A stretch of DNA of 63,516 nt, the filler included, from Octopus bimaculoides (lineage: Eukaryota), in the NCBI RefSeq assembly GCF_001194135.2. It is 6 parts of 6 records of this genome, joined end to end, with 100 filler letters (N's around TTAATTAATTAA, not from the genome) between each part and the next. Parts side by side here need not be neighbours in the genome. Positions count along the whole stretch, not along the records: positions 1 to 23,623 come from NC_068982.1; 5 more parts are not named here. One strand, given 5' to 3'. A model generated the notes under the pieces. That model had not been told where the DNA came from. It made no database searches and saw nothing but the letters and a program-made list of their open reading frames with translations. Within the stretch, counting starts at the first letter, position 1; each line of letters starts with the position of its first letter. This document shows positions 331-23,623 of this stretch, one piece after another. The translations under genes were made by a program, and so were the position numbers.

Positions 331-1000
331 AATTCGAGACAATTATTATACGTCTGTCACCTCATCGCTATGACTTTAGGTTCCTAATCTGGTTATAAAA
401 TGTGGTGAGAGTAGTACTAAGTTTCATGTGATTATTCAGGCTCATAAAATGTTCATATGGTAAGGTAATACTATTGCGTTAAAAAATCCACAAATCCACA
501 AACATTTCGACGTTATAATAAGAGTTATTGAGTTGAAATTATTATCCTGACAAGTCTATGTATTCTGCGTCTACTTAGAAAAGGATTTTCCAATTTAAGA
601 TGGTGTTTGTAACTTAACGATAGCTATCTGACAATGACCAATTGCAGCCAGGAACTATATTTATATACTAAAAATAGATAAAGTTTGGAAGGTCTATTTC
701 GCTTTTTGAAATTTTCTATCTGCAGTTATTTTTGCAAGATGTGATGTGATTCTCGTCTATAGATTATTCGACGCATTACGAAATTCTTAATTATATCTGT
801 AAGCTTTTCGAACCAACTACACGGCATTGAGATTATCTCCTTTGTCACCAAATGTGTAGCATTATATGAACCACGTGACCTGTAATAACGAAGGGTTAGC
901 TTGTAGTAGTTTGAAGGCGAAATAGCATTATGTGAACTTCGAGGGTATAATCAGGAGAAACATTTCTAGGCACATTATTTGTAATAAACTCGTTTATCAT

Positions 1001-1398
1001 TATTTTGTTTCTAGGAATAATTGCTCCATTGTTGGGGATTGACAAATTAATGTTGTACGGTTAACATCCCATGACTTGCATAACTTATTGAATCACATCA
1101 AACAATGAACTTCAAATTCGATAGCATAGGATCCATACCATATTTCTTGTAGAACATAGATTTGATAAGACCTTTGACAGGAACACTGTTAGATTGTCAT
1201 TCTACAACACCTAACCTTGCGTAAAACATTGCATCTCAATTAACAAAAAAATAATAATGGTGCTGCAAACGTTGGTAGCAGCTGAAATTCCAATAATTAT
1301 TATGTTTGTAGGAATAATTGCTGAATTGTTAGGGGTTGTCAAATTAATGCTGTATGGTTAAAATCCCATGACTTGCATATCTTATTCAGGCATATCAG
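1001..1398 (+). repeat. About 95-bp direct repeat (copies ~1001-1095 and ~1299-1393, spacing 298 bp)
   Basis: ctaggaataattgctccattgttggggattgacaaattaatgttgtacggttaacatcccatgacttgcataacttatt versus gtaggaataattgctgaattgttaggggttgtcaaattaatgctgtatggttaaaatcccatgacttgcatatcttatt. Confidence 0.9.
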
Positions 1399-4286: not shown

Positions 4287-4464
4287 GGCTATCTGACAGA
4301 ATCTGTAGCATACTGGGCAAAATGCTTAGCGGCATTTCGTCGACCCTGAAATAATAAAAGTCAAAGTCGACCTCGGCGGAATTTGAACTTAGAAAGTATA
4401 AACAGACAAAATGCCGTTGAGCATTATACTAGGCCTGCTAAGGATTGTGCTTTGTTGCTGCCTT
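4287..4464. mobile_element. Fused fold-back SINE: + strand head (4287-4340) joined to an antisense copy (4338-4464)
   Basis: ggctatctgacagaatc...gcttagcggcatttcgtc is followed directly by gaccctgaaataataaaagtcaaagtcgacctcggcggaatttgaactt...gctgcctt. Confidence 0.75.
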
Positions 4465-4480
4465 AAGCAGTTATTAGTAG

Positions 4481-6449: not shown

Positions 6450-6592
6450 GCTGCAGCAGCAACAGCAGCAACAAGGACAACAAGAACAACAACAGCAACA
6501 ACAACAACTACTACTACTACTACTACTAGTAGTAGTAGTTGTAGGAGGAGGAGGAATAGGAGTAGGAGGAGGAGGAGGAGGAGGAAGAGGAA
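6450..6592. repeat. Compound trinucleotide array (CAG/CAA/CTA/TAG/GAG)
   Basis: Read directly from the sequence. Confidence 0.95.
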
Positions 6593-7136
6593 TCGCTGTA
6601 TTTTTCTTAGATCTTTTTGTCAATATTTGGACAATACACTATCCGCTATTTTCCCGTTTGGACTTTGAGTTTATCCGAGCTAGCGGCTAATTAGACTGTC
6701 ATTTTCTTCTCTTGACCTCTCTAGCGTTTCTCACTTACACATCCCAAAGACGTTACCAAATATGTCCTTCAATTGTTCCTTTCTAAAATTGCAAACGTTT
6801 GAAGAACATCGGTACAAACGTCAATCTATACACAAAAAATCCATACAGACAGACAATAACTGCACACTATTACGCCTCTTTACAATAAACAGTACAAAAG
6901 TGGTGCTTATTTATATTCTTACTTCATTGGCGTGAGTAATTATGTGGAAAATTGTCTCTAAATTATTAGATTCTGATCCTCATGAGGTGACCTATTAACG
7001 AATATGTATATACAATCCAGCATAGATCCGACTTACGAAATTTTAGAAATAAAGCAAAACTTAGCTATAGGAATATGTCTAGCAATTATATTAAATATTA
7101 TTACATTAATATATAATTATTCTACGTACAGTAGAT

Positions 7137-7268
7137 ACAGGGCCTGAAATTTGGGCGAAGAAGTCTAGTCGATTACATCGTACCCAGTGCTCCACTTGTA
7201 CGTATGTGATTTTGATCGAAAGAATGAATGGCAAAGTCGACATTGGAGGAATTTGAACTCAGAACATA
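7137..7268 (-). mobile_element. CORE-type SINE, partial
   Basis: ggcctgaaatttggg...gtcgattacatcgtacccagtgctc...gcaaagtcgacattggaggaatttgaactcagaac. Confidence 0.85.
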
Positions 7269-10200
7269 GATTAATATATAATTGCATATGTAAGTATAAA
7301 CATATCTAGCCACTGAAAGTAAACAAGGCATAATGTCATACATAGTAAAGGCATTAACAAATCTACATTTAGAAATTAGGAATATTCTTTCGATATAAGC
7401 AGAAATGAATGAACATATTGTAATAGGAAACATTTGATTATAAACACGAGCTTACACAAAAGTATCCAACCTGGAGATCGAATTATTAATCCAGAAAATT
7501 ATTATTGTAATTTCAATAATTAATCCGGCATATTAAATATAAAATAGAACTGCCACAAAGATTTTATACAGAAAACTTTAAGCAATTTACTTATGGAGGT
7601 TTTTTTCTTTACATTTCTTTGGTTTTTCAAGTAAGTATGGGGTAACAGATCTAATCGAAAATAATATATTCTACCTACGTCTATAAACATATTGACAAAT
7701 ACGGAGATCTCCATTAAATCTCCATCAAATGTAGCTTCGTAATATACAAAGCCGGATTAAGATTATCGAATATCATGTCAACAAGCATTTTACAAATCCA
7801 CTATAATTGTATTTCTCCACAAACACATGTATACAAACACATTTATTTATATATAAAAGGATGTTCTAATTTTATGCTTTACGACGTTTTCTCTCTTCCT
7901 ATATTCTTAAGATAGCTTCTTAAGTTTGCTTCATAAAACTAGACCACAGCTTTTCATTCAATCAACATATCTGTATCACTATATAACTATTTTCCTATAT
8001 ATATATATATATATATATATATNNNNNNNNNNNNNNNNNNNNNNNNNNNNNNNNNNNNNNNNNNNNNNNNNNNNNNNNNNNNNNNNNNNNNNNNNNNNNN
8101 NNNNNNNNNNNNNNNNNNNNNNNNNNNNNNNNNNNNNNNNNNNNNNNNNNNNNNNNNNNNNNNNNNNNNNNNNNNNNNNNNNNNNNNNNNNNNNNNNNNN
8201 NNNNNNNNNNNNNNNNNNNNNNNNNNNNNNNNNNNNNNNNNNNNNNNNNNNNNNNNNNNNNNNNNNNNNNNNNNNNNNNNNNNNNNNNNNNNNNNNNNNN
8301 NNNNNNNNNNNNNNNNNNNNNNNNNNNNNNNNNNNNNNNNNNNNNNNNNNNNNNNNNNNNNNNNNNNNNNNNNNNNNNNNNNNNNNNNNNNNNNNNNNNN
8401 NNNNNNNNNNNNNNNNNNNNNNNNNNNNNNNNNNNNNNNNNNNNNNNNNNNNNNNNNNNNNNNNNNNNNNNNNNNNNNNNNNNNNNNNNNNNNNNNNNNN
8501 NNNNNNNNNNNNNNNNNNNNNNNNNNATATATATATATATATATATAATATGCACGACTAATATATATATATATGTTTATTTAACACACCCAAATCAAGT
8601 GTTCCTATGTCCAGGTATTCGTTAAAGTCAACTGGAAAATGAATAGATTTGAGGGCTTTGTGTTAAATTCGTAAGTCCTAAGCATAGATGACACTATTTC
8701 ATAAGTTATATAGGTAATACGTAAGCTGCATTCTGCTATATATATTATGTATTAAACACGAACGTTGAATCTTTTCAATATCATTATGAAAGTACAAACT
8801 TCATGCAGGTAATTCAATAAATATTTTTTAAAATAGATAGCAATAGATGTTAAAAGAGTAATGTACAATTTCAACACTCGGTGATGGACGCCTCTTACAG
8901 CAAGTTTTCAGAGAATTACCACTCAGGTTGACATATATCTTCATTATACCATAAATATATTCTTTGAATGTTTGGCGTTTTTGCGGCTATGTAACGTATA
9001 TTGGAAAGTTTTACGTCTATGTAACATATTGGAAAGCTTACAAATCAGCGATGCCCGTGCTTGCACCTTTTTAAAGTGAGAAAATGTCTACGACAGGGAC
9101 AGTGCCTCTCTCTAAAAATGTATTCATTTTCTCAAAAAGAATTTGGTAGAAGCAAAATCCTAATGTAACGTAAGCGACTTTGTACCCAGTTGTGCAGGCA
9201 AGGTATTCTTTTGGATATACAGAAATGCATGCATGCATCAACACATCTGGTAGTTGCAGACAACTTTTCGTTCGGGCGAAAAACATGTTCCTGTTGGGTT
9301 TTCAAATTGGTGGTATTATATGTCATTGACATACCTTGGCATAAATCACACTACTTTTTGGTCATGGAGTAGAATTTGAACACAATATTCGTAAACATTC
9401 CAAAATGCATCACGATCGGCACTTTAACTCTTCTGCAAATTCGCCTTATGTATATGCATATATATGTACATATATATATGTGTATATGCATCTGAATATA
9501 TATGTAAATTTTAACTTACTGATTTAAACTTATATTACTTAACATTGTGTAAGCACAGATTGCACTAGCATATTCAAATAAAGAAATTAAACAATGCTTT
9601 TTGGTGTATGTATTTGTGTTTCCATTAGTCAGTCTGAGTTTTATTGATACTCTGCTATGCAACTACGCTTGATAATTCCATGAAATGCCCCATGTCGTAG
9701 AGACGACAGTATATTAGTTCCAAATAGTGTACAGTTTTATGAATTGGCAGTTCAGTGACGACGTTTATAAACAGGCGAGTTAACTCCCTAAATCTCACAT
9801 ACTGGTTACGTTGCAAAGTCCATTTTCTATAGCGACACCATTTCGAAACCGATGGTATTAGAATATAGAAAGCTAGCATAAGAGCCAACGATTTGAAGGT
9901 AAGTTTTACGCTACACGTGCATTGATTCAGGTATAAGGAGTGTGTAAGTTCCACTTCCGTGTCCAGTTTCACAGGTCTTGGAAGCAAAGAAAAATCTCTA
10001 ATATCGACATAGAGCATGCTTGATAGGTACCTTTCTTACACACATATAGTAATAGCAACAGTGTTATCCACTTCTTAACAATGTAATCAAAATTAAAAGC
10101 CGGTTCATCTCTGTGAATCACTTGTAGCAGGTGGAAGATATCTCTGTTTTACATTAATAAATCCATTTAATAAATCTATAAATGAAATTGCAGACGATCG

Positions 10201-10598: not shown

Positions 10599-12102
10599 TC
10601 ACACACACAGACAGACACTCACACACAGAGACAGACACACACACACACACACGAGCACACGCACAGCCCAGGAGTGGCTGTGTGATATNNNNNNNNNNNN
10701 NNNNNNNNNNNNNNNNNNNNNNNNNNNNNNNNNNNNNNNNNNNNNNNNNNNNNNNNNNNNNNNNNNNNNNNNNNNNNNNNNNNNNNNNNNNNNNNNNNNN
10801 NNNNNNNNNNNNNNNNNNNNNNNNNNNNNNNNNNNNNNNNNNNNNNNNNNNNNNNNNNNNNNNNNNNNNNNNNNNNNNNNNNNNNNNNNNNNNNNNNNNN
10901 NNNNNNNNNNNNNNNNNNNNNNNNNNNNNNNNNNNNNNNNNNNNNNNNNNNNNNNNNNNNNNNNNNNNNNNNNNNNNNNNNNNNNNNNNNNNNNNNNNNN
11001 NNNNNNNNNNNNNNNNNNNNNNNNNNNNNNNNNNNNNNNNNNNNNNNNNNNNNNNNNNNNNNNNNNNNNNNNNNNNNNNNNNNNNNNNNNNNNNNNNNNN
11101 NNNNNNNNNNNNNNNNNNNNNNNNNNNNNNNNNNNNNNNNNNNNNNNNNNNNNNNNNNNNNNNNNNNNNNNNNNNNNNNATATATATATATATATATATA
11201 TAGACACAAAGACTTGTGTCCACCGGGCTGACCACTCTACCAACGCACTCCAAACTTGTCAAAAGAATACGAAAATTAAATAAAGAAATTCCATGAAGAA
11301 GGCACTTAAACTAACGATCAATAATTTGGTAATGATTTTTAACATTTTAGCACGATCACAAATTAGTTGAAGTTTGTGAGAAGACAATAATATCTTATTA
11401 ATCATTAATCAAATGTTGTTCTTTGGGACATGAATTTTGAGGGCTGAAAGGATTAACGGTAGCATTGATCCAACGAAGTTTGAAATGAGAAAGTAAAAGA
11501 TAAATATACTGTAAGGTGGTTTATCGATTGAGCCATCCCCGTTTACATTAGACATTTCTAATATCGAGTAAGAACATAACTTTTGCTACTGTAGTGAACA
11601 GTCAACTTCATCGATTCTACTAGTACTTATGTTATCGATCCGAATTCTATGCCATTAAATAACTAAATTGAATGACATGTCTAACGAACAACAGTTTCAG
11701 CACAGTCGTCTTGCAATACTGTTATATAACTTATACAGAACGCACGCATTATAATTATTACTTAATACCTTCTCATGCCCATTGCAAGAGACCGCGACGT
11801 AACATATTCCACGCAAGGCATAAATAAAACACATGAAACATGAATATTAAAAGACAAAACCATAAATTTGATGGAACCTATATAAAACCTCCCACTAACG
11901 TCTTATTCAATACTGCTCACACTTTAAGAAAAGAGACAATCGTTTGATAGTGCAATGATTATTAAGCGCATCTAATTATGCTTTCAGTAATTAGTTACAA
12001 ACGCAGATGATCATACTGTGAGGACTGAATAGTCGAGAAATTACATTCACTATATTTGATTGGTACTTAGTTTGTTGACACTAAATAAATCAACTGAAAG
12101 AA

Positions 12103-12145: not shown

Positions 12146-12821
12146 TTCACAGAGACAATTGATCATGTTGTTTCTGACTGCCCAGTCCGCACTGAAAAGG
12201 TGTATCTCATAAGACATGACAGACTAGGGCAGTACATCCAACGGAATGCTTGTAAATACTACAAAATTAAATCCAATGATAAGTGGTACAGGCATCATCC
12301 AGAGGACGTAGTAAATAGCGAGGGCGTCATCATCCTTTGGAACTTCCCAATACAAACCGATAAAAATTGACTCTAATCGGCCAGACATTGAGATCAAAGA
12401 CAACAACAGAGGAGCTTGTCTGTTAATAGACATGTCTGTCCCACAAGATCAAAATGTCTCAAAGAAAGAATACGAAAAGCTTTCTCACAATAAAGATCTG
12501 CAAATTGAAATCACAAAAATATGGAAGCTTAGTACTACGATAATACCAGTAGCAATTAATGGTTTGGGAATGATAAAGAAGGGAGCTGAGAAATATATTA
12601 AGCAACTTCCCGGTAACCTCAATCTCCGTGAAGTACAAAAGATAACCTTGATGGGTACAGCCCATATACTACAGAAAGCAATCTCCATCTAAAATGGAAT
12701 AAATGTGGTGATAATTTAACATGCATAGCAAAACAAAAGTGCCCTTGCTACTCTTGGCCTCCGGTGAAATGACCGATACTAGGGCAGCTGAAATAAATTT
12801 ATAATGAAAGGAAACCATAAA
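12146..12821 (+). mobile_element. 5'-truncated R4/Dong-type non-LTR retrotransposon (zinc knuckle end, RLE, 3' UTR)
   Basis: ETIDHVVSDC..RHDRLGQYI..WY.HHPE..ILWNFPIQTDK, a frameshift, then NRPDI..LLIDMSVPQDQNVSKKEYEKL..DLQIEI..IIPVAI..LGMIKKG..GTAHILQKAISI* (stop at 12692). It is followed by (TAA)n. Confidence 0.92.
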
Positions 12822-12877
12822 TAATAATAATAATGATAATAATAATAATAATAATGATAATAATAATAATAATAATG

Positions 12878-12914
<37 letters not shown>

Positions 12915-12919
12915 TAATA
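12822..12919. repeat. (TAA)n/(TGA) microsatellite
   Basis: Read directly from the sequence. Confidence 0.97.
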
Positions 12920-13063
12920 TTCACTAGAACAAAACTGTACAAATCCAAATATATGGTACCCTAGGCATAACACCTACATGAACTTCTAACTTGTTGTCTC
13001 TTGAGGTCTCTGGGTGAGACTTGGATCCAACTTGTACAAATGCAAATCAAAAGTCAAACATAA
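12920..13063 (+). mobile_element. Probable 3'-UTR-only fragment of another R4/Dong-type element
   Basis: A unique 144-bp segment bracketed by (TAA)n on both sides and ending in aaacataa(aat)n like its neighbours. It has no coding part, so the assignment rests on context and recall. Confidence 0.5.
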
Positions 13064-13079
13064 AATAATAATAATAATA

Positions 13080-13587
13080 TTGAGAAAAGTGTGGGATTAG
13101 AGAGAGGCAAGACGTGGTATTAACACAAACCGCATAGAGTGGCGGAGTTGGAGACTAGCAAGATCCTCTGGGATTTCCCAATACAAGTATAACAGACAGG
13201 ATGTTGTGGAGTTCGACATGATGCACTACATGTGCTATATATTTGATGTTGCGTACCACTTTGATCCACAAATAGTGAAGAAGGAAGGCCAAAAATAGAT
13301 AAATACAACCCACTTATATACGAAATAGACCAGCTATAGAAAATGGAGGTGAGGATAGTGCCAATTATTGATGGATCGTTGGGGACAGTGTCAGAAGGCA
13401 TCAAGAGGAATATAAAGGAAATCAGAATAGAGTGCCCAGTAGAACTGTTACAAAATGTTTACCTCCTTGTCACGGCTAGAATGATCAGGGAAGTATTAGA
13501 TAATTGAAAAGAACAGATAGCATGCAGGCAGCAAGCCCCCTAGGCGTGCAAGACTCCAGGAGCTCCAACAAAGCTTGAAATAAAAAG
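13080..13587 (+). mobile_element. 5'-truncated R4/Dong-type RLE fragment, second subfamily
   Basis: EKCGLERGKTWY*HKP..KILWDFPIQ..CYIFDVAYHFD..KKEGQKIDKYNPL..IVPII.GSLGTV..LL.TARMIREVLDN* (stop 13505-13507), then a UTR and (TAA/CAA)n. Confidence 0.88.
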
Positions 13588-13884
13588 TAATAATAATAAC
13601 AACAACAACAACAACAACAAAAATAATGATAATAGTAATAATAATAATAATATTCTTTTCTTTTCGTTCGTTTTACTTTCTTTTCCCCCCTTTATATTCT
13701 TTATTTACGTCCTTATTTTTTATTTTATATTCCTTTTCCTTTCTGTCTTGCTTGCGCCTTTTCTTTATCACATGACTTTCTAAATTAAGAATCTGGTGTG
13801 TTTATGTTAATGACCTACGAATTTATACAGTGTATTTCTCTGCCCTGTCACCAAAACACTCGAAATGGAAGCCAAATTGAAAGA

Positions 13885-13942
13885 AGAAGAAGAAGAAGAA
13901 GAAGAAGAAGAAGAAGAAGAAGAAGAAGAAGAAGAAGAAGAA

Positions 13943-14031
<89 letters not shown>

Positions 14032-14047
14032 TGATGATGATGATGAT
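13885..14047. repeat. Compound (GAA)n(GAT)n(AAT)n(GAT)n array
   Basis: Read directly from the sequence. Confidence 0.97.
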
Positions 14048-14633
14048 AGGGTAGGACAGTGTTTACATTGGAAAATATGTAATCACTACAAAATCAGCAC
14101 TCCCGCTTACTGGTATGAATATCATCCTGATCCAGACATTGAAGGTAAAGATGTCACTATTCTCTGGGATTTTCCAGAACTATCCGGACTTATCGACCAG
14201 ACATAGTCATTAAAGACGTGGAAGAAAATACTTGTAGACTTACAGATGTAAATGTTCCCACTGATAAAAATATACCTGTAAAGCAATTTGACAAATTAAG
14301 TAAATATATGGTCCTGGAAATTGAAAAACAAAATATGTGGCATCTTTAAGCGGGAACTGTTCTTGTTTTTGTGGGTGCCCTAGTTATGATAAGAAAGACA
14401 TGTCAAAAACATCTAGATAATATTCCAGTAGAACCATGTCTTAGAGAAATATTTAGGAAAAACCCTATCCATTTAAATGTCTGTGTAGTATTACATGAAG
14501 ATATTTCGCTATTGCCCCTGCCACTTCCCCTCCACAAGCTTTCAGTCATACTGTAACATCTCTTAACGTTCACTCGCACTAGGACGCTGGGATTGTCTCG
14601 GCAAGTGATTGTAACAAGCATGCAGATTTAAAG

Positions 14634-14636
<3 letters not shown>
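14045..14636 (+). mobile_element. 5'-truncated R4/Dong-type RLE fragment, third subfamily
   Basis: DRVGQCLHWKICNHYKI..WYEYHPDP..VTILWDF..RPDIVIKD..DVNVPTDKNI.VKQFDKLSKY.VLEIE..VGALVMIRK, then a UTR and (CAA)n(TAA)n. Confidence 0.9.

Positions 14637-14716
<80 letters not shown>
14637..14716. repeat. (CAA)n(TAA)n tract shared by a Dong 3' end and an antisense SINE tail
   Basis: Read directly from the sequence. Confidence 0.95.
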
Positions 14717-14718
<2 letters not shown>

Positions 14719-14872
14719 TCATTTCTACTACAGATCCAAACAAGATCTGAGGTTTCATGTAAGGGTGCCAGTCAATTACGTCGACCCCAGTGCTCGATCC
14801 CCGATCCTGAAAGAATGAAAGTCGACCTCAGCAGCGTTTGAACTCAGAAGGCAAAACCGGAAGAAATGCCTC
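14717..14872 (-). mobile_element. CORE-type SINE
   Basis: gatcatttctactac tail; gtcgaccccagtgctc; gaaagtcgacctcagcagcgtttgaactcagaa. Confidence 0.8.
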
Positions 14873-15804
14873 ACGACACACTAAGGAATAAGTCCGCTCA
14901 CCATATGGCAAGCTGACAAGTATAATGAATTACGGCAAGAAACTTTAAGCAGGTGACTACAGAGACGGGGTGAAAGATGTTATATAATATATATGGGACC
15001 AAGATGAAATGTTATAAAATATATATCGCAAATAAAATAAAATAAGGAAAATATTCAACTCCATATTATTTGAAAAATGATGGAAGTTATTTGAGGTTAT
15101 TGTTTACGCACAAGTAAGAAATCACCAGCTAGAACAGGTTAGAGTTCTCTACGTTTCTGCTCGCCCACATGTCTGCCATTCCTCCTATAGGAGCTTCGTG
15201 CACTCGACATTTCCCGGTAACATGTTTTGATGTTTTATATCTAGGATACAGTATATCTCAGTTTTAGCGCATTATGGTGTATTTCTATTGTTTCAGTTAA
15301 GACCTTCTCTCCAGGTGTCAAATTTGCAAGCTACGATAACTAGGCCAAAACGTCTGCTGTACTATTGAGTGCTTCTCTATAATAAGACTCCGTCTGACCT
15401 CCGGCACACAATGAATTATATTTAATTGTTTCCTTCATTGCCGTACCATTGCTTTTCTAAGGGGGAACATCATTGTGATTTTGAAGATAAATATTATTGT
15501 TTTTCTCAGGGTGCTCTCTTTTGTATTTTTTTTTCTCTGTTAAGAGTGACCAGATTTTGGAAGACTTACATGTCTTTACTTCTTTCATGCTCTACTCGAC
15601 GGTTTGAAATTATTTCTTTCATCGTCACCTGCAATTCAGTCACAAGACATTGGAGTGCAGATGATGCTGTTCAGAAGTTCCTTGGAGACTAAATTATGCT
15701 GCAACAGCTGTTTCTTTTGTCTTATATTCTGCATCATTTATTGATACTTGTAGCCAAGGCAGGAAAAATGTGCACTTTCTCTACTTTGTTAGGTTCTAGA
15801 GACG

Positions 15805-15900
15805 CAAAAGAGGTGGTGATATATTCATATCTACTGTAACCTACAAAAGCATATGGACAACTTGCTGTGGGAAGTTGAAAATGCAACGATTCAGACAGAG
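15805..15900 (+). mobile_element. Possible decayed RTE LINE 3' coding end
   Basis: KRW*YIH ... AYGQLAVGS*KC weakly resembles the RTE motif LRW.GH..RM....PK..YGQL..GKR. Confidence 0.3.
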
Positions 15901-16052
15901 TTCTTCCTCGGGAAAAAGTCGACAGGGGAGAAATTAAAGTGTCACTGCAGAGTTTTATATCCTTTTAGTTCGAAAAACAGGCTTCAACTGATAAGGAAGA
16001 CCACGGAACTTCATACACAAACAGAAAGTAGTAGGAAACAAGCATTGGTTGT

Positions 16053-16134
16053 ATGTGTGTGCGTGTGTGTGTGCGTGTGTGTGTGCGTGTGTGTGTGCGT
16101 GTGTGTGTGCGCACGTGTGTGCGCGTGTGTGTGC

Positions 16135-16168
<34 letters not shown>
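16053..16168. repeat. (GT)n(GA)n microsatellite
   Basis: Read directly from the sequence. Confidence 0.95.
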
Positions 16169-16170
<2 letters not shown>

Positions 16171-16646
16171 AACTGAATGAAATGTGAAAGAGAAGCTTGT
16201 GGAAAGCAAGAGTGAACTAAAGGGAAAAGATGGGGTAAGAGGGAAGTTGATGGATAAAAAAGGATTACTGAACTAAGAGTAGGTATAGGAGTAAGAGGAA
16301 AAACATTCGTAAACACATGTCGGTGACATGATACGAAGTTCAACCATAAAACATCGCCTTTTCCATTTCTTTGAGTATGTACATCGATGTTGTGTGGAGG
16401 TACTGCTTCTTGTGCTTAAAGTTAGTAATGACAGGTTGGCCAAACATGCTTCGTATTATGCTTCGAGTGTGCTCTCGATAGCGATTAACAAGGTATCAGT
16501 CAATTTCCTCAATGTAGAGAGCGCCTCAGAATATGCATATGATACAAAATATTGAAGAAAAGTGAGTTGGAAACACTAGATTATCAGTCCGGTTTTTATC
16601 TCTTTTGCTGAATAATACAAGTCCTGTAGGCGTAGACCAACACTGC

Positions 16647-16714
<68 letters not shown>

Positions 16715-16748
16715 GTCTGTCTGTCTGTCTATTTATCTATTCATCTAT
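16647..16748. repeat. (ATCT)n tetranucleotide array
   Basis: Read directly from the sequence. Confidence 0.95.
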
Positions 16749-16959
16749 CTTTGAGTGGGAGAGAGGAAGAAAGTTTATGTGTAGTAAATACTTTTCCTTT
16801 TATAATAAGATTCATACAGAATTTGAAAAGTTTCCACCCTATAAATAGCCTTATCTCAAACTGCAGAGCCCGAAAGAAACATGTCTAACTCGGGCAGAAG
16901 CAGAAGCAGTAGCACTAGAAGCCCCACTACCAACAATAGCGGTGATAACAACTACAATA

Positions 16960-17083
16960 TCAAGAAGAAGAAGAAGAAGAAGAAGAAGAAGAAGAAGAAG
17001 AAGAAAAACAAGAAGAAGAAGAAAAAAAAAAGAAGAAGAAGAGGAACAAGAAGAAGAAAAAGAAGAAGAAGAAGAAGAAGAAG

Positions 17084-17119
<36 letters not shown>

Positions 17120-17155
17120 AATAACACTAATACTAATATCAATAATAATAATAAA
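16960..17155. repeat. Compound (GAA)n(CAA)n(TAA)n array continuous with a SINE tail
   Basis: Read directly from the sequence. Confidence 0.95.
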
Positions 17156-17159
17156 AATT

Positions 17160-17335
17160 ATTTTCTATCACAAGGCCTGAAATTTTAGGGAGGGGTTAAG
17201 TCGATTACATCGACCCCGGTGCTCAAGCAGTACTTATGTTATTGACCCCGAAATGATGAAATGCAAAGTCGACCTCGGCGGAATTTTACTCCAGAAGGTG
17301 AAGGCGTACCAAATACCGCTAAGCAACTTTTACTT
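17160..17335 (-). mobile_element. CORE-type SINE
   Basis: cacaaggcctgaaattttagggaggggttaagtcgattacatcgacccc...gcaaagtcgacctcggcggaattt...ccgctaagca. Confidence 0.92.
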
Positions 17336-17484
17336 TGCATACAAACGATTCTACTGTTTTAATAATAATAATAATAATAATGAGAACAATAAAAATAAGA
17401 ATTTCTTCGTTGTTCACAGAGATCGTAAAATGTTTAGCAAAAAAATAGGAAAAGACAATGCTGATTTAGATAAACATGAGTAAG

Positions 17485-18464: not shown

Positions 18465-18815
18465 TGGCACTCCGTCGTTTACGACGTCGAGGGTTCCATT
18501 TGATCCGATCAGCGGAACAGCCTGCTCGTGAAATTAACGTGCAAGTGGCTGAGCACTCCACAGTCACGTGTACCCTTAACGTAGTTCTCAGGGATATTCA
18601 GCGTGACACAGTGTGATAAGGCTGACCCTTTGAATTACAGGCACAACAGAAACATGAAGTAAGAGTGAAAGAAAGTTGTGGTGGAAGAGTACAGCAAGGT
18701 TCGCCACCATCCCCTGCCGGAGCCTCGTGGAGCGTTAGTTGTTTTCGCTCAATAAACACTCACAAGGCCCGGTCTGGGAATCGAAACCGCGATCCTATGG
18801 GCCATTGCGCCTCCA
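18465..18815 (-). mobile_element. tRNA-derived SINE, head plus central domain A plus tail variant i
   Basis: Reverse complement starts tggaggcgcaatggccc...gcggtttcgattcccagaccggg (A/B boxes), continues gagcgaaaac...ccggcaggggatggtggcgaa...caactttctttcactc, and ends with tail gaactacgttaagggtacacg...cacgagcaggctgttccg. Confidence 0.92.
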
Positions 18816-20431: not shown

Positions 20432-20489
<58 letters not shown>

Positions 20490-20493
20490 CATA

Positions 20494-21358
20494 TACGAGG
20501 ACTGATCTATCTGTATCCGGACTGTTGCCATAATAACGAAGCTAAAGCACGCAGAGTAAAGCCGCTTGGCACAGATTGACTCTGTACGCTGCTGTGCTGG
20601 TGCACTAAGTTTTAACGTACTAGCTCACTTCCGCTGTTTAGAGCAGTGATTCGATGGAAGGTATGTAGCGTGTGATCGTCGCATTGAACATTACTGAGAA
20701 AGTTGAGCAGAGAATCTACATCAAATTTTGTTAAAAGCTTGGCGATACCCGCTCAGAAGCCTACGCAAAGTTTTCAAAAAGATTTCATCGTTCTGGATAC
20801 AAACAAGGAGATCTTCTACAACTGAGACCCGAGTGTCTTTATGTTCAGTTGAAAACAGTTTTGGCACAAACTTGGCAGTCACACGTCTCATACCCAAATC
20901 TTCAGTGATAATGTACTGGACTGAACCATAATTAATCTGCACATCCTCTGATAATTCACGGATGGTGATGCGACGATTTTCCCTCACGGCTACATGCACA
21001 TCTGCGATGCTTTTCTCCCAAAACGTTCGTCAATATCGACATTTTTCGGCGATGTTGGAAACGTCTCAACCACATGTGTGCAACTCATGCACTCCACTCC
21101 ATACAATTTCTGCAACTTTGCGTATGCCTCTCATTACTTATCGCCACAACAACTTTTTCTATCGTGGTCAATGCGACGATCACACGTTACACATTTCTCT
21201 TCCAAGCAGTACTGTAAACAGTGAAAGTGAGCTGGAACATTAAAACTTAGTGCACGTACACCGCAGAGCACATAGTCAATCTGTGCCAAGCAGCTTTACA
21301 CTACGTGCTTTAGTTTCGTTACTATGGTAACAGTCTTGATACTTATTGGTCAGTTCTC

Positions 21359-21361
<3 letters not shown>
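20494..21361. mobile_element. Non-autonomous mariner derivative made of two 5' ends in inverted orientation, inserted in (TA)n
   Basis: Arms tacgaggactgatc...cacttccgctgttta and the reverse complement tacgagaactgacc...cactttcactgttta. The left arm continues into TEKVEQRIYIKFC*KLGDTRSEAYAK on +. The right arm continues on - into the HTH region ITIRELSEDVQINYGSVQYIITEDLGMRRVTAKFVPKL..FLK. Confidence 0.9.
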
Positions 21362-21392
<31 letters not shown>

Positions 21393-22044
21393 NNNNNNNN
21401 NNNNNNNNNNNNNNNNNNNNNNNNNNNNNNNNNNNNNNNNNNNNNNNNNNNNNNNNNNNNNNNNNNNNNNNNNNNNNNNNNNNNNNNNNNNNNNNNNNNN
21501 NNNNNNNNNNNNNNNNNNNNNNNNNNNNNNNNNNNNNNNNNNNNNNNNNNNNNNNNNNNNNNNNNNNNNNNNNNNNNNNNNNNNNNNNNNNNNNNNNNNN
21601 NNNNNNNNNNNNNNNNNNNNNNNNNNNNNNNNNNNNNNNNNNNNNNNNNNNNNNNNNNNNNNNNNNNNNNNNNNNNNNNNNNNNNNNNNNNNNNNNNNNN
21701 NNNNNNNNNNNNNNNNNNNNNNNNNNNNNNNNNNNNNNNNNNNNNNNNNNNNNNNNNNNNNNNNNNNNNNNNNNNNNNNNNNNNNNNNNNNNNNNNNNNN
21801 NNNNNNNNNNNNNNNNNNNNNNNNNNNNNNNNNNNNNNNNNNNNNNNNNNNNNNNNNNNNNNNNNNNNNNNNNNNNNNNNNNNNNNNNNNNNNNNNNNNN
21901 NNNNNNNNNNNNNNNNNNNNNNNNNNNNNNNNNNNNNNNNNNNNNNNNNNNNNNNNNNNNNNNNNNNNNNNNNNNNNNNNNNNNNNNNNNNNNNNATGTG
22001 TGTATGTGTGTGTGTGTGCATAAACTTGCACTTTGTTGGTTACG

Positions 22045-22290
22045 ACGATGAGTGTTCAAACGGATCCGATAAACGGAACGACAGCCTGCTCGTGAAATTA
22101 ATATATAAGTGAACTGAGCACCTCACAGACACGTTTATCCTCAATGTAGTCTCGAAGAGATTCAATGTGACACAGAATGTGACCAGGCTGGTCCTCTGAA
22201 TTACAGGTAAAACTCATTTTTGCCAGCTGAGTGGAATGGAACAACGTGAAATAAAGTTTCTTGTTCAACGAGAAAACGCGCAGTCGTGAA
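22045..22290 (-). mobile_element. SINE with CORE-like central domain plus tail variant i
   Basis: Shares the cagcctgctcgtgaaattaa tail with 18465, but joined to ttgaacaagaaactttatttcacgttgttccattccactcagctggcaaaaatgagt. Confidence 0.8.
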
Positions 22291-22418
22291 TCATACTTAA
22301 TGCACTAATCACAAAGTCACGCACACTTATGTTATATCTATATTCGTTTCGAACAACTGAGGAAATAAGACATTACTTATAATGTACTTATTTTCTCAGT
22401 CTGGTATACATTGTATCG

Positions 22419-22646
22419 TGGAGGCGCAATGGTCCAGTGGTTAGGGCAGCAGACTTGCGATCGGAGGATCGCGGTTTCGATAACCAGACCGGGCGTTGTG
22501 TATGTTTATTGAGCGAAAACACCTAAAGCACCACGAGGTTCCGGCTCGGGGTGGTGGGACTCCTGTTGTACTCTTTCGCCCCAACTTTCTTTCACTATTT
22601 CTTCCTGTTTCTTGAGTAACGCTGCGATGGACTGGCGTAGGGGGGG
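22419..22646 (+). mobile_element. tRNA-derived SINE, head plus central domain A plus tail variant ii (cut by gap)
   Basis: tggaggcgcaatggtccagtgg (A box), ggtttcgataacc (B box), central domain as at 18465, then gagtaacgctgcgatggactggcg (V-domain-like). Confidence 0.9.
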
Positions 22647-23059: not shown

Positions 23060-23623
23060 CTCATTTATTATCTGTTTTTACATGACGGAACGCCAGCGTC
23101 ACCACTGTTGTAAGTAATTTCAACTTTATATTTTCTGACGCTACTCTATCTCTTTCTCTATCACTTTTCCCCCTCTCGTTCTTCCTCTGTTACTACTACG
23201 TACCTCTGTTTACCCCTCTCATTCTTCCTTCTGTTACTACTATATCTCTCTCTTCCCCCTCGTACTTCCTTCTTTTACTACTATATTCCTCTCTTTCTCT
23301 CGTTGCTCACCTATTCTTCTACTTCCTCCCTTTGTTTCTCCCTCTACCACTCTCTCTCTCTCCCTTACCCCTGCATGGTCACATGCTTCCGGTCAATAAT
23401 CCTTTTCTTCCTTGGCTATCGCCGAGCAAACACGCGAACTTACTTCGTCCCCACTTTCAAGTTCGTGCCTCACAGCGTTCATATACACATAATTTTTCAC
23501 GTCTGGCCGCATGGCCGTTTCCGTTTGTTTTCCTGTCTTGTTTTCTTTTCCGTTTGTTTTCCTGTCTTGTTGTTTGTCCGCCACTACATTCCTCCATGAC
23601 ACAGGTTTAATCTGTGTATACAA
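23060..23623 (+). repeat. Pyrimidine-rich repeat with internal tandem units (about 45-bp imperfect unit; 28-bp duplication at ~23519-23575); possibly a PLE pseudo-LTR
   Basis: ttccgtttgttttcctgtcttgtt occurs twice and ttactacta-containing units three times. The PLE pLTR identity is recall only. Confidence 0.4.

What the first reader, a model, noticed from the sequence alone, without database searches (positions are those of the whole stretch)
14045..14872. SINE tails as landing pads: Dong element and antisense SINE share one (TAA)n tract (site 1 of 3)
Seen: the Dong 3' end is followed by (CAA)n(TAA)n and then immediately by the reverse-complemented 3' end of a CORE-type SINE. The same tail-to-tail geometry recurs at 57.4 kb, and at 60.95 kb a Dong tail abuts a SINE's internal repeat. 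All three Dong loci in the window therefore touch SINE-derived simple repeats. The SINE at 17160 has the same (TAA)n tail with no Dong, which would be the unoccupied state. Inference: a very abundant SINE with an (ATT)n tail disperses target sites for a (TAA)n-specific retrotransposon, a SINE-to-LINE facilitation opposite to the usual SINE parasitism. I am not aware of this being described, but could not search.
Basis: partly seen in the sequence, partly recalled or inferred. Interest (0 to 1): 0.75.

Follow-up and report, generated by a model that had tools for sequence, protein, structure and literature searches.

The report
Dong LINE copies beside octopus SINE
An octopus genome stretch holds three dead copies of a (TAA)n-targeting jumping gene (Dong), one of which shares its (TAA)n tract with the tail end of an old SINE; the layout is real, but this window cannot show that SINE tails act as landing pads for Dong.

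Summary
A 5'-truncated Dong/R4-type LINE remnant lies at 14048-14637. It is followed by (CAA)12 and (TAA)14-15, a 6-bp spacer, and then the 3' end of an antisense tRNA-derived SINE from 14722. The host is an Octopus: the best protein hits are O. bimaculoides at 83% identity.

Neither has a SINE at its tail.

The contact between (TAA)n tracts and SINE 3' ends is not chance. Two of eight tracts are abutted, with P about 2e-4. One SINE subfamily seems to carry (TTA)n-type tails.

The direction of cause is unresolved:
- A SINE RNA with a (UUA)n tail priming on a (TAA)n strand would give the same tail-to-tail layout.
- The supposed "unoccupied" SINE at 17160 has (NAA)n on both sides, as if it had itself landed in a microsatellite.
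- The (CAA)n block belongs to Dong.
- In another animal's contigs, Dong copies form head-to-tail arrays in each other's (TAA)n tails, with no SINE.

Dong's (TAA)n specificity in molluscs is already published. No octopus genome was reachable, so the genome-wide test could not be run. This is an ordinary locus carrying a plausible, modestly new, untested idea.

The parts
12152..12692 (+). Dong copy C: 5'-truncated coding remnant (CCHC motif plus RPD..D..K endonuclease domain), stop codon at 12690-12692
   Evidence: tblastn (P0045 residues 1026-1204); 83% identical to O. bimaculoides A0A0L8FLB2; translation
12693..12919 (+). Dong C 3'UTR (to 12821) and (AAT)33 tail with periodic GAT units; followed by unique DNA, not a SINE
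13085..13507 (+). Dong copy B: heavily decayed 5'-truncated coding remnant, stop codon at 13505-13507; preceded by (ATA)7 at 13060-13079
   Evidence: (E 2.7e-15 to P0005)
13508..13652 (+). Dong B 3'UTR ending ..AAAAGTAA, then a mixed (TAA)3(CAA)7(TAA)n tail; followed by pyrimidine-rich DNA, not a SINE
13881..14047 (+). Perfect compound microsatellite (AAG)21(ATG)10(ATA)18(ATG)6; upstream remnant of the tract that Dong A entered
14048..14476 (+). Dong copy A: 5'-truncated coding remnant with one in-frame stop, one frameshifting deletion and a C-terminal deletion
   Evidence: (79% identity to P0017 over residues 18-60; E 7e-39)
14477..14637 (+). Dong A 3'UTR ending ..AAAGTAAA. Copy B ends ..AAAAGTAA and a foreign Dong in L002 has GAAAGTAACAA close to its 3' end
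14638..14715 (+). (CAA)12 then (TAA)14-15, both perfect. The CAA block is part of the Dong tail; the TAA block is the tract shared with the SINE
   Evidence: CAA variants occur in other Dong tails
14716..14721 (.). TGATCA spacer between the tract and the SINE 3' end; possibly two mutated repeat units
14722..14925 (-). Old, internally deleted tRNA-derived (CORE-type) SINE with its 3' end facing the (TAA)n tract; the 5' boundary is uncertain (14903-14925)
   Evidence: nhmmer (E 8.5e-39, profile positions 3-202); alignment
16962..17158 (+). Impure compound microsatellite (AAG)41(AAC)14(AAT-like)14 abutting the 3' end of the next SINE
17154..17359 (-).
   Evidence: (E 1.4e-53)
17360..17402 (+). 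(TAA)7 followed in phase by seven degenerate NAA units, on the 5' side of the 17160 SINE; this puts the SINE inside an (NAA)n tract
7084..7275 (-). Third SINE copy of the same 3' variant (7119-7275), with a degenerate A/T-rich tail at 7084-7118

Best explanation
The region 12.1-14.9 kb of an Octopus genome is a small same-strand array of three dead copies of Dong/R4-clade LINEs. All three are 5'-truncated and 3'-complete.

These elements carry a reverse transcriptase and a C-terminal restriction-like endonuclease. They integrate by target-primed reverse transcription specifically into (TAA)n microsatellites, so each copy ends in a (TAA)n tail and recreates its own target.

The rightmost copy (A) entered a compound A-rich trinucleotide tract. 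The right-hand boundary of that tract is the 3' end of an old antisense tRNA-CORE SINE. The most likely history is that this SINE subfamily carried a (TTA)n-type tail, which reads (TAA)n on the plus strand. That tail, grown by slippage, then formed at least part of the tract that Dong A used.

The (CAA)12 block next to the Dong 3'UTR is Dong's own tail variant.

Shown: the identities, boundaries and orientations of the elements, and the non-random contact between tracts and SINE 3' ends.

Inferred: that the SINE was there first. Even if it was, SINE tails are only one source of Dong targets, alongside Dong's own tails and free microsatellites.
For: Dong identity:
- The C-terminal domain matches O. 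bimaculoides proteins at 83% identity.
- Full-length relatives of 1000-1300 aa have a central RVT_1 domain, a CCHC zinc motif and this C-terminal domain, with no match to an APE-type endonuclease family.
- Their best solved relatives are R2 proteins, aligned from the reverse transcriptase through the endonuclease (E 9e-38).
- All three copies end in plus-strand (TAA)n.
- (TAA)n is the published Dong target in molluscs (PMC7998251, PMC3812793). Dong-R4 and tRNA-Core SINEs are both abundant in octopus (PMC13282606, PMC8967140).

SINE present first at this site:
- The tract ends 6 bp from the SINE 3' end, and there is no (TAA)n beyond the SINE 5' end.
- A second SINE of the same 3' variant has a similar distal-(AAG)n to proximal-(AAT)n tract and no Dong.
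- Three of three copies of that variant have A/T-rich or (TTA)n tails. None of the three copies of the other variant does.
- The contact between tracts and SINE 3' ends has P about 2e-4.
- The SINE is the most decayed long copy in the piece.
Against: - The order of events is not demonstrated. No target-site duplication could be found for either SINE, and no orthologous empty site was available.
- The same geometry arises if a SINE RNA with a (UUA)n tail primes on the plus-strand (TAA)n of a Dong tail.
- The SINE at 17160 has (NAA)n on both sides.
- The SINE subfamily assignment rests on six copies only.
- SINE copies in this piece are strand-biased (9 of 11 on the minus strand). Antisense orientation is therefore the regional default.
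- Dong copies C and B have no SINE at their tails.
- The (TAA)15 tract is perfectly pure although the SINE is very decayed. It may therefore be mostly Dong-made or slippage-made.
Confidence: 0.5

Rival explanations
1. The SINE came second. A SINE RNA with a (UUA)n tail annealed to, and was primed from, the plus-strand (TAA)n 3'-OH of an existing tract. That tract was either Dong A's tail or the microsatellite Dong A sits in. On this reading SINEs exploit (TAA)n tracts and Dong tails, not the reverse.
For: - TPRT logic predicts exactly the observed layout: plus-strand (TAA)n followed by an antisense SINE (inference from the established mechanism).
- The SINE at 17160 is flanked by 197 bp of (NAA)n on its left and 43 bp on its right, as expected for insertion into a tract.
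- Compound trinucleotide tracts also exist here without any SINE, at 6460-6591.
Against: - At site 1 no (TAA)n remains beyond the SINE 5' end, so the nick would have had to fall at the very edge of the tract.
- The SINE copy looks at least as decayed as Dong A.
Confidence: 0.25
2. Self-seeding Dong array in a pre-existing microsatellite zone. The (TAA)n-rich zone and Dong's own regenerated tails are the landing pads. The SINE is a bystander that happens to bound one tract.
For: - There are three Dong copies on one strand within 2.5 kb, and all eight (TAA)n tracts are on the plus strand.
- In foreign contigs L001 and L002, all 10 Dong 3' ends examined are followed by (TAA)n. The copies form head-to-tail arrays of 5'-truncated elements with no such SINE.
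Against: - Exact abutment of SINE 3' ends to two of eight tracts is unlikely for a bystander (P about 2e-4).
- In the window, Dong copies are separated by 140-400 bp of non-Dong DNA rather than sitting directly in each other's tails.
Confidence: 0.2
3. Pure coincidence in a genome that is about 12% SINE.
For: SINE relics are dense here: 11 in 21 kb. SINEs make up 11.6% of the O. vulgaris genome (PMC13282606).
Against: The simulation gives P = 0.024 for one abutted tract and 2e-4 for two.
Confidence: 0.05

Closest known systems
Dong of Bombyx mori and its relatives DongAg and DongBg (R4 clade; Xiong & Eickbush 1993; Kojima & Fujiwara 2004, as cited in PMC3812793 and PMC7998251)
   Same: - LINE with RT plus a C-terminal restriction-like endonuclease.
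- Inserts in (TAA)n, with the sense strand ending in (TAA)n.
- Mollusc members are known.
- Dong-R4 is already annotated as abundant, and as having many recent insertions, in octopus (PMC13282606).
   Different: - Only the last ~150-180 codons and the 3'UTR survive in these copies.
- The three copies are too diverged from one another for blastn to link them.
- Clade placement by RT phylogeny was not done.
Retroposon tails as birthplaces of A-rich microsatellites (Alu/L1 poly(A) giving rise to (NAA)n; review PMC3812793)
   Same: A SINE 3' tail is continuous with a long trinucleotide tract. The review also lists microsatellite-targeting LINEs, Dong among them, as interrupters of such tracts.
   Different: - Here the tail would be (TTA)n on the SINE sense strand, not poly(A).
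- The explicit chain 'SINE tail becomes Dong target' was not stated in the passages of that review I read.
RTE-linked microsatellite families in Lepidoptera (PMC2887409) and the RTE-2_OV element of octopus, whose 3'UTR is a microsatellite (PMC9115989)
   Same: LINE or SINE 3' ends that carry and spread simple repeats. This is a plausible origin of the SINE's trinucleotide tail.
   Different: The partner LINE of this SINE and its tail unit were not identified here.
Tx1L LINEs of Xenopus, which insert specifically into another mobile element (recalled from memory, not checked here)
   Same: A site-specific LINE whose target is supplied by a different, more abundant mobile element.
   Different: The Tx1L target is a specific sequence within a DNA transposon, not a simple-repeat tail. 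The dependency is established there but is only hypothesised here.

Membership tests
Dong/R4-clade (R2-superfamily) LINE | Single ORF with a central RT, a CCHC motif and a C-terminal PD-(D/E)xK restriction-like endonuclease, with no N-terminal APE endonuclease | tested here: met
   - The window copies carry the CCHC and RPD..D..K region.
- Eight full-length relatives have RVT_1, seven of them zf-RVT as well, followed by this C-terminal domain, and none matched Exo_endo_phos.
- They align to solved R2 proteins across the RT and endonuclease.
- There is a weak sub-threshold match to PF15518, which I recall as a viral PD-(D/E)xK endonuclease domain.
- The RT itself is absent from the window copies because they are truncated.
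Dong/R4-clade (R2-superfamily) LINE | Insertion in (TAA)n, with (TAA)n following the 3' end on the sense strand | tested here: met
   3 of 3 window copies and 10 of 10 foreign copies.
Dong/R4-clade (R2-superfamily) LINE | RT phylogeny groups the family with Dong/R4 rather than with R2, NeSL, CRE or Hero | not tested
   There is no RT in the window and no reference Dong or R4 sequences were on hand. The assignment rests on target site, architecture and published octopus annotation.
Dong/R4-clade (R2-superfamily) LINE | 5' HDV-like self-cleaving ribozyme (PMC3774820) | not testable with these tools
   All three copies lack their 5' ends. The Rfam scan of the piece found nothing.
tRNA-derived CORE SINE (octopus OR2 / tRNA-Core type) | Short dispersed multicopy element of about 200 bp | tested here: met
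   11 profile matches in 21 kb; alignment.
tRNA-derived CORE SINE (octopus OR2 / tRNA-Core type) | tRNA-like head with A and B boxes | tested here: inconclusive
   A B-box-like GAGTTCAAATTCC is visible by eye in the alignment. ARAGORN and Rfam call no tRNA.
tRNA-derived CORE SINE (octopus OR2 / tRNA-Core type) | CORE central domain | not testable with these tools
   - No reference CORE or OR2 sequence was available.
- The resemblance of ..TTTCATCCTTTCGGGGTCGATAAAATAAGTACC.. to the MIR core is recalled from memory only.
- The literature says tRNA-Core and tRNA-Deu SINEs dominate in octopus (PMC8967140).
   Two clear cases (14722, 17154) and one degenerate case (7119) out of six copies with intact 3' ends. 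The other three (4480, 3922, 4292) have none.
tRNA-derived CORE SINE (octopus OR2 / tRNA-Core type) | Target-site duplications | tested here: inconclusive
   Flank alignments scored no better than shuffled controls.
Proposed 'SINE tail as Dong landing pad' relationship | The SINE and its tail predate the Dong insertion | not testable with these tools
   No orthologous or polymorphic allele was available. There were no family consensus sequences for dating.
Proposed 'SINE tail as Dong landing pad' relationship | Dong tails are enriched for antisense SINE 3' ends relative to all (TAA)n tracts | tested here: inconclusive
   In this piece 1 of 3 Dong tails qualifies, and so does the (AAT)n-like tract at 17143-17154, which carries no Dong.

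The most novel reading that the evidence does not exclude
(TAA)n/(TTA)n tracts in octopus genomes may act as two-faced landing pads that couple two retroelement families. The (TTA)n strand primes Dong, whose RNA ends in (UAA)n. The (TAA)n strand primes an abundant SINE subfamily with a (UUA)n tail. Each insertion would lay down fresh tract for the other, forcing tail-to-tail pairs. This mutual facilitation would help explain why both Dong-R4 and SINEs have done so well in octopus.
Probability: 0.25. Interest if true: 0.55.

Novelty: new member of a known kind. Interest (0 to 1): 0.3.

Why it matters
If SINE tails really supply a large share of Dong's targets, the niche of a 'safe-site' LINE would scale with the copy number of an unrelated SINE. 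SINEs make up about 12% of the O. vulgaris genome. That is a dependency running opposite to the usual SINE-on-LINE parasitism. It would bear on why Dong-R4 shows many near-identical, near-full-length (apparently recent) insertions in O. vulgaris. As it stands, the locus mainly illustrates known behaviour: Dong's (TAA)n specificity, its tendency to array, and the link between retroposon tails and microsatellites.

Tried and rejected
1. Fetching octopus genome DNA for the genome-wide test failed by every route.
- The O. bimaculoides proteins P0001 and P0002 are not in the contig index.
- A metagenome scan with an 18-mer from the SINE core returned 77 loci, none with more than the seed itself. 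They are chance hits.
- A protein search with the open antisense reading frame of the SINE, meant to sample what precedes SINE 3' ends in predicted octopus proteins, found no candidate.
- A literature search for a SINE sequence string found nothing.

2. Papers that might state the tail of the octopus SINEs were not held. This covers Gilbert & Labuda 1999 and Albertin 2015. The held papers do not give it.

3. A target-site duplication search for both SINEs scored at or below shuffled controls.

4. ARAGORN and Rfam found nothing in the piece.

5. One literature search was swamped by unrelated meanings of its terms.

6. A possible antisense SINE relic directly upstream of Dong C (11984-12089) scored only 4.8 bits. 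It is too weak to use.

7. Microsatellite purity was considered as a clock. It was rejected because long tracts are kept pure by slippage.

Full report
**What is at the coordinates.** The plus strand from 14048 translates to the C-terminal part of an R2-superfamily LINE protein. The readable segments are ..VGQCLHWKICNHYKISTPAYWYEYHPDPDIEGKDVTILWDFP.. and RPDIVIKD..C.L.DV.VPTD.N...K.FDKLSKY..LEIE...MWHL..

The copy is damaged. It has one in-frame stop, a frameshifting deletion in the TDR..AN segment, and a deletion just before the C-terminal ..LGKTLSI*. The stop codon is at 14474-14476. The 3'UTR runs to 14637 and ends AAAGTAAA. A perfect (CAA)12 follows at 14638-14673, then a perfect (TAA)14-15 at 14674-14715.

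Six bases later (TGATCA) a profile built from the SINE copies in the piece matches the minus strand from 14722 to about 14903. The match reaches the 3' end of the profile (E 8.5e-39; alignment).

**Organism and identity of the LINE.** The best protein matches to the equivalent domain of a neighbouring copy are Octopus bimaculoides proteins, at 83% identity.

A library-wide search with relative P0017 found 8,672 proteins. Many are 1,000-1,300 aa long with this domain at the extreme C-terminus. Eight of them were scanned against Pfam. All have a central RVT_1 and none matches an APE-type endonuclease family; seven also have a weak zf-RVT (CCHC) match.

The best solved relatives are R2 retrotransposon proteins. 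The alignment runs from the reverse transcriptase through the restriction-like endonuclease (9nl2, E 9e-38). The domain alone gives only a sub-threshold match to PF15518, which I recall as a viral PD-(D/E)xK endonuclease.

Published work states that R4/Dong elements carry RT plus a REL-endonuclease. [quoted passage not shown] Dong-R4 and tRNA-Core/tRNA-Deu SINEs are both major octopus repeats. In O. vulgaris, SINEs make up 11.6% of the genome, and 1,129 Dong-R4 insertions count as recent (PMC13282606, PMC8967140). I did not run an RT phylogeny. 'Dong-like' therefore rests on architecture, target site and prior annotation.

tblastn finds exactly three Dong fragments in the piece. All are on the plus strand, all are 3'-complete, and all are truncated to the last 150-180 codons.

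| Copy | Coding remnant | Tail |
|---|---|---|
| C | 12152-12692 | (AAT)33 at 12822-12919 |
| B | 13085-13507 | mixed TAA/CAA at 13588-13652 |
| A | 14048-14476 | (CAA)12 (TAA)14-15 at 14638-14715 |

The DNA after the tails of C and B gives no SINE profile match, even with filters off. In this piece alone, then, one Dong tail in three touches a SINE.

**Whose repeat is it?** Copy A ends ..AAAGTAAA and copy B ends ..AAAAGTAA. A Dong copy in an unrelated animal (L002) has GAAAGTAACAA close to its 3' end. B and several foreign tails contain CAA units. The (CAA)12 block is therefore best read as Dong's own tail variant. Only the (TAA)14-15 block can be 'shared' with the SINE.

**Is the contact between SINE and tract real?** The piece holds eight (TAA)n>=4 tracts, all on the plus strand and none on the minus strand. 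All (CAA)n, (AAG)n and (ATG)n tracts are also on the plus strand only.

Two of the eight tracts are abutted within 7 bp by the 3' end of an antisense SINE, at 14722 and 17154. If the five antisense SINE 3' ends are placed uniformly, one such contact has P = 0.024 and two have P = 2e-4. The association is real.

The alignment suggests two 3' variants of the SINE:
- Copies at 14722, 17154 and 7119 share ..TTTCAGGCC..TGT..TAGAA. Each is followed on the SINE sense strand by (TTA)n or by degenerate A/T-rich repeats.
- Copies at 4480, 3922 and 4292 end ..TTGTGCC/AACCAA..ATTTGAA, two of them reading on to ..ACC. None has such a tail.

Three against three is suggestive, not proof.

**Why the direction is open.** Dong's RNA ends in (UAA)n and is primed from the nicked (TTA)n strand. 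A SINE RNA ending in (UUA)n would be primed from a (TAA)n 3'-OH on the opposite strand.

Both routes give plus-strand (TAA)n followed by an antisense SINE. The tail-to-tail layout is forced either way and says nothing about order. This is inference from the established TPRT mechanism.

For SINE-first at site 1:
- The tract stops at the SINE 3' end, and no (TAA)n remains beyond the SINE 5' end.
- The SINE is very decayed.
- The SINE at 17154 has a similar arrangement, distal (AAG)n and proximal (AAT)n, without any Dong.

Against SINE-first:
- That same 'unoccupied' SINE has (TAA)7 plus seven in-phase degenerate NAA units on its 5' side (17360-17402). It therefore sits inside an (NAA)n tract, as if it had itself landed in a microsatellite.
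- Compound trinucleotide tracts also occur without a SINE, at 6460-6591.
- Nine of eleven SINE relics here are on the minus strand anyway.
- No target-site duplications could be resolved.

**Dong seeds its own targets.** Two 20-kb loci from ENA contigs of another invertebrate lack the octopus SINE. They carry 13 Dong fragments.

All ten 3' ends examined are followed by (TAA)n. The protein map shows head-to-tail runs of 5'-truncated, 3'-complete copies on one strand. There are six in a row in L001 and four in L002. By eye, the sequence after most of these tails is another Dong fragment. The three-copy array in the window looks like a sparse version of this pattern. A SINE is therefore not needed to disperse Dong targets.

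**Verdict.** The locus is an ordinary Dong/R4 mini-array in an octopus (TAA)n zone. One copy is tail-to-tail with an old SINE.

The inference 'SINE tails are landing pads' is plausible for this site: I put SINE-first at about 0.5. It is not demonstrated, it is weaker than stated, and it competes with the mirror-image model and with Dong self-seeding.

Each component is already documented: Dong's (TAA)n targeting, retroposon tails giving rise to microsatellites, and abundant Dong-R4 and SINEs in octopus. In the literature I could search I found no explicit statement of the SINE-to-Dong link. That link would be a modest extension of known behaviour. The decisive test is genome-wide and was out of reach here.

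Noticed in passing
window 12152-12919 and 13085-13652: Two further 5'-truncated Dong-like copies lie on the same strand as the reported one. Each has its own (TAA)n tail and neither is followed by a SINE. Together with copy A they form a three-copy array.
   Followed up: yes
window 12800-17400: There is a strong strand asymmetry. All (TAA)n, (CAA)n, (AAG)n and (ATG)n tracts lie on the plus strand and none on the minus strand. Across the piece, 9 of 11 SINE relics are on the minus strand. This may reflect an intron or transcription-linked bias.
   Followed up: partly
window 20721-20999 (-), with inverted repeat 20471-20705 / 21150-21384: An ORF reads MHVAVRENRRITIRELSEDV..VTAKFVPKLFSTEHKDTRV. 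From memory this resembles the N-terminal HTH region of mariner-type transposases. It is flanked by a 235-bp inverted repeat at 81% identity. Pfam gives only a sub-threshold HTH_24 match.
   Followed up: partly
window 18467-18796 vs 22028-22612: An unclassified dispersed repeat is present in two pieces. One pair is direct (76% over 187 bp) and one is inverted (85% over 149 bp).
   Followed up: no
window 996-1100 vs 1293-1397: A 105-bp direct repeat at 85% identity, about 300 bp apart.
   Followed up: no
window 23170-23295: A 41-bp tandem repeat in three copies, pyrimidine-rich.
   Followed up: no
window 4290-4465: A composite of SINE fragments. A sense head fragment is joined to an antisense body fragment. 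Four SINE pieces are packed between 3637 and 4690, which looks like nested or recombined insertions.
   Followed up: no
window 11984-12089 (-): A very weak antisense SINE relic (4.8 bits) ends where Dong C begins. If real, Dong C interrupted a SINE body rather than a tail.
   Followed up: partly
L001 about 10635-10680: Inside the (TAA)n tail of a foreign Dong copy sits a ~45-bp insert: GTGGCGTGCACCTGTAATCCAGCTGCTTGGAGGCTAGAATC. From memory it resembles 7SL/Alu sequence. It could be a template switch onto 7SL RNA or an assembly contaminant.
   Followed up: no
3'UTRs of window Dong B and C (13508-13587, 12693-12821) and L002 10550-10700: Dong 3'UTRs from octopus and from the foreign animal share a motif, ..(T)AGCATGCA(A/G)G..CAA(G/A)CCC(C/T)CT.. 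In L002 it is followed by what looks by eye like a GC-rich hairpin. This may be the element that the RT recognises.
   Followed up: no
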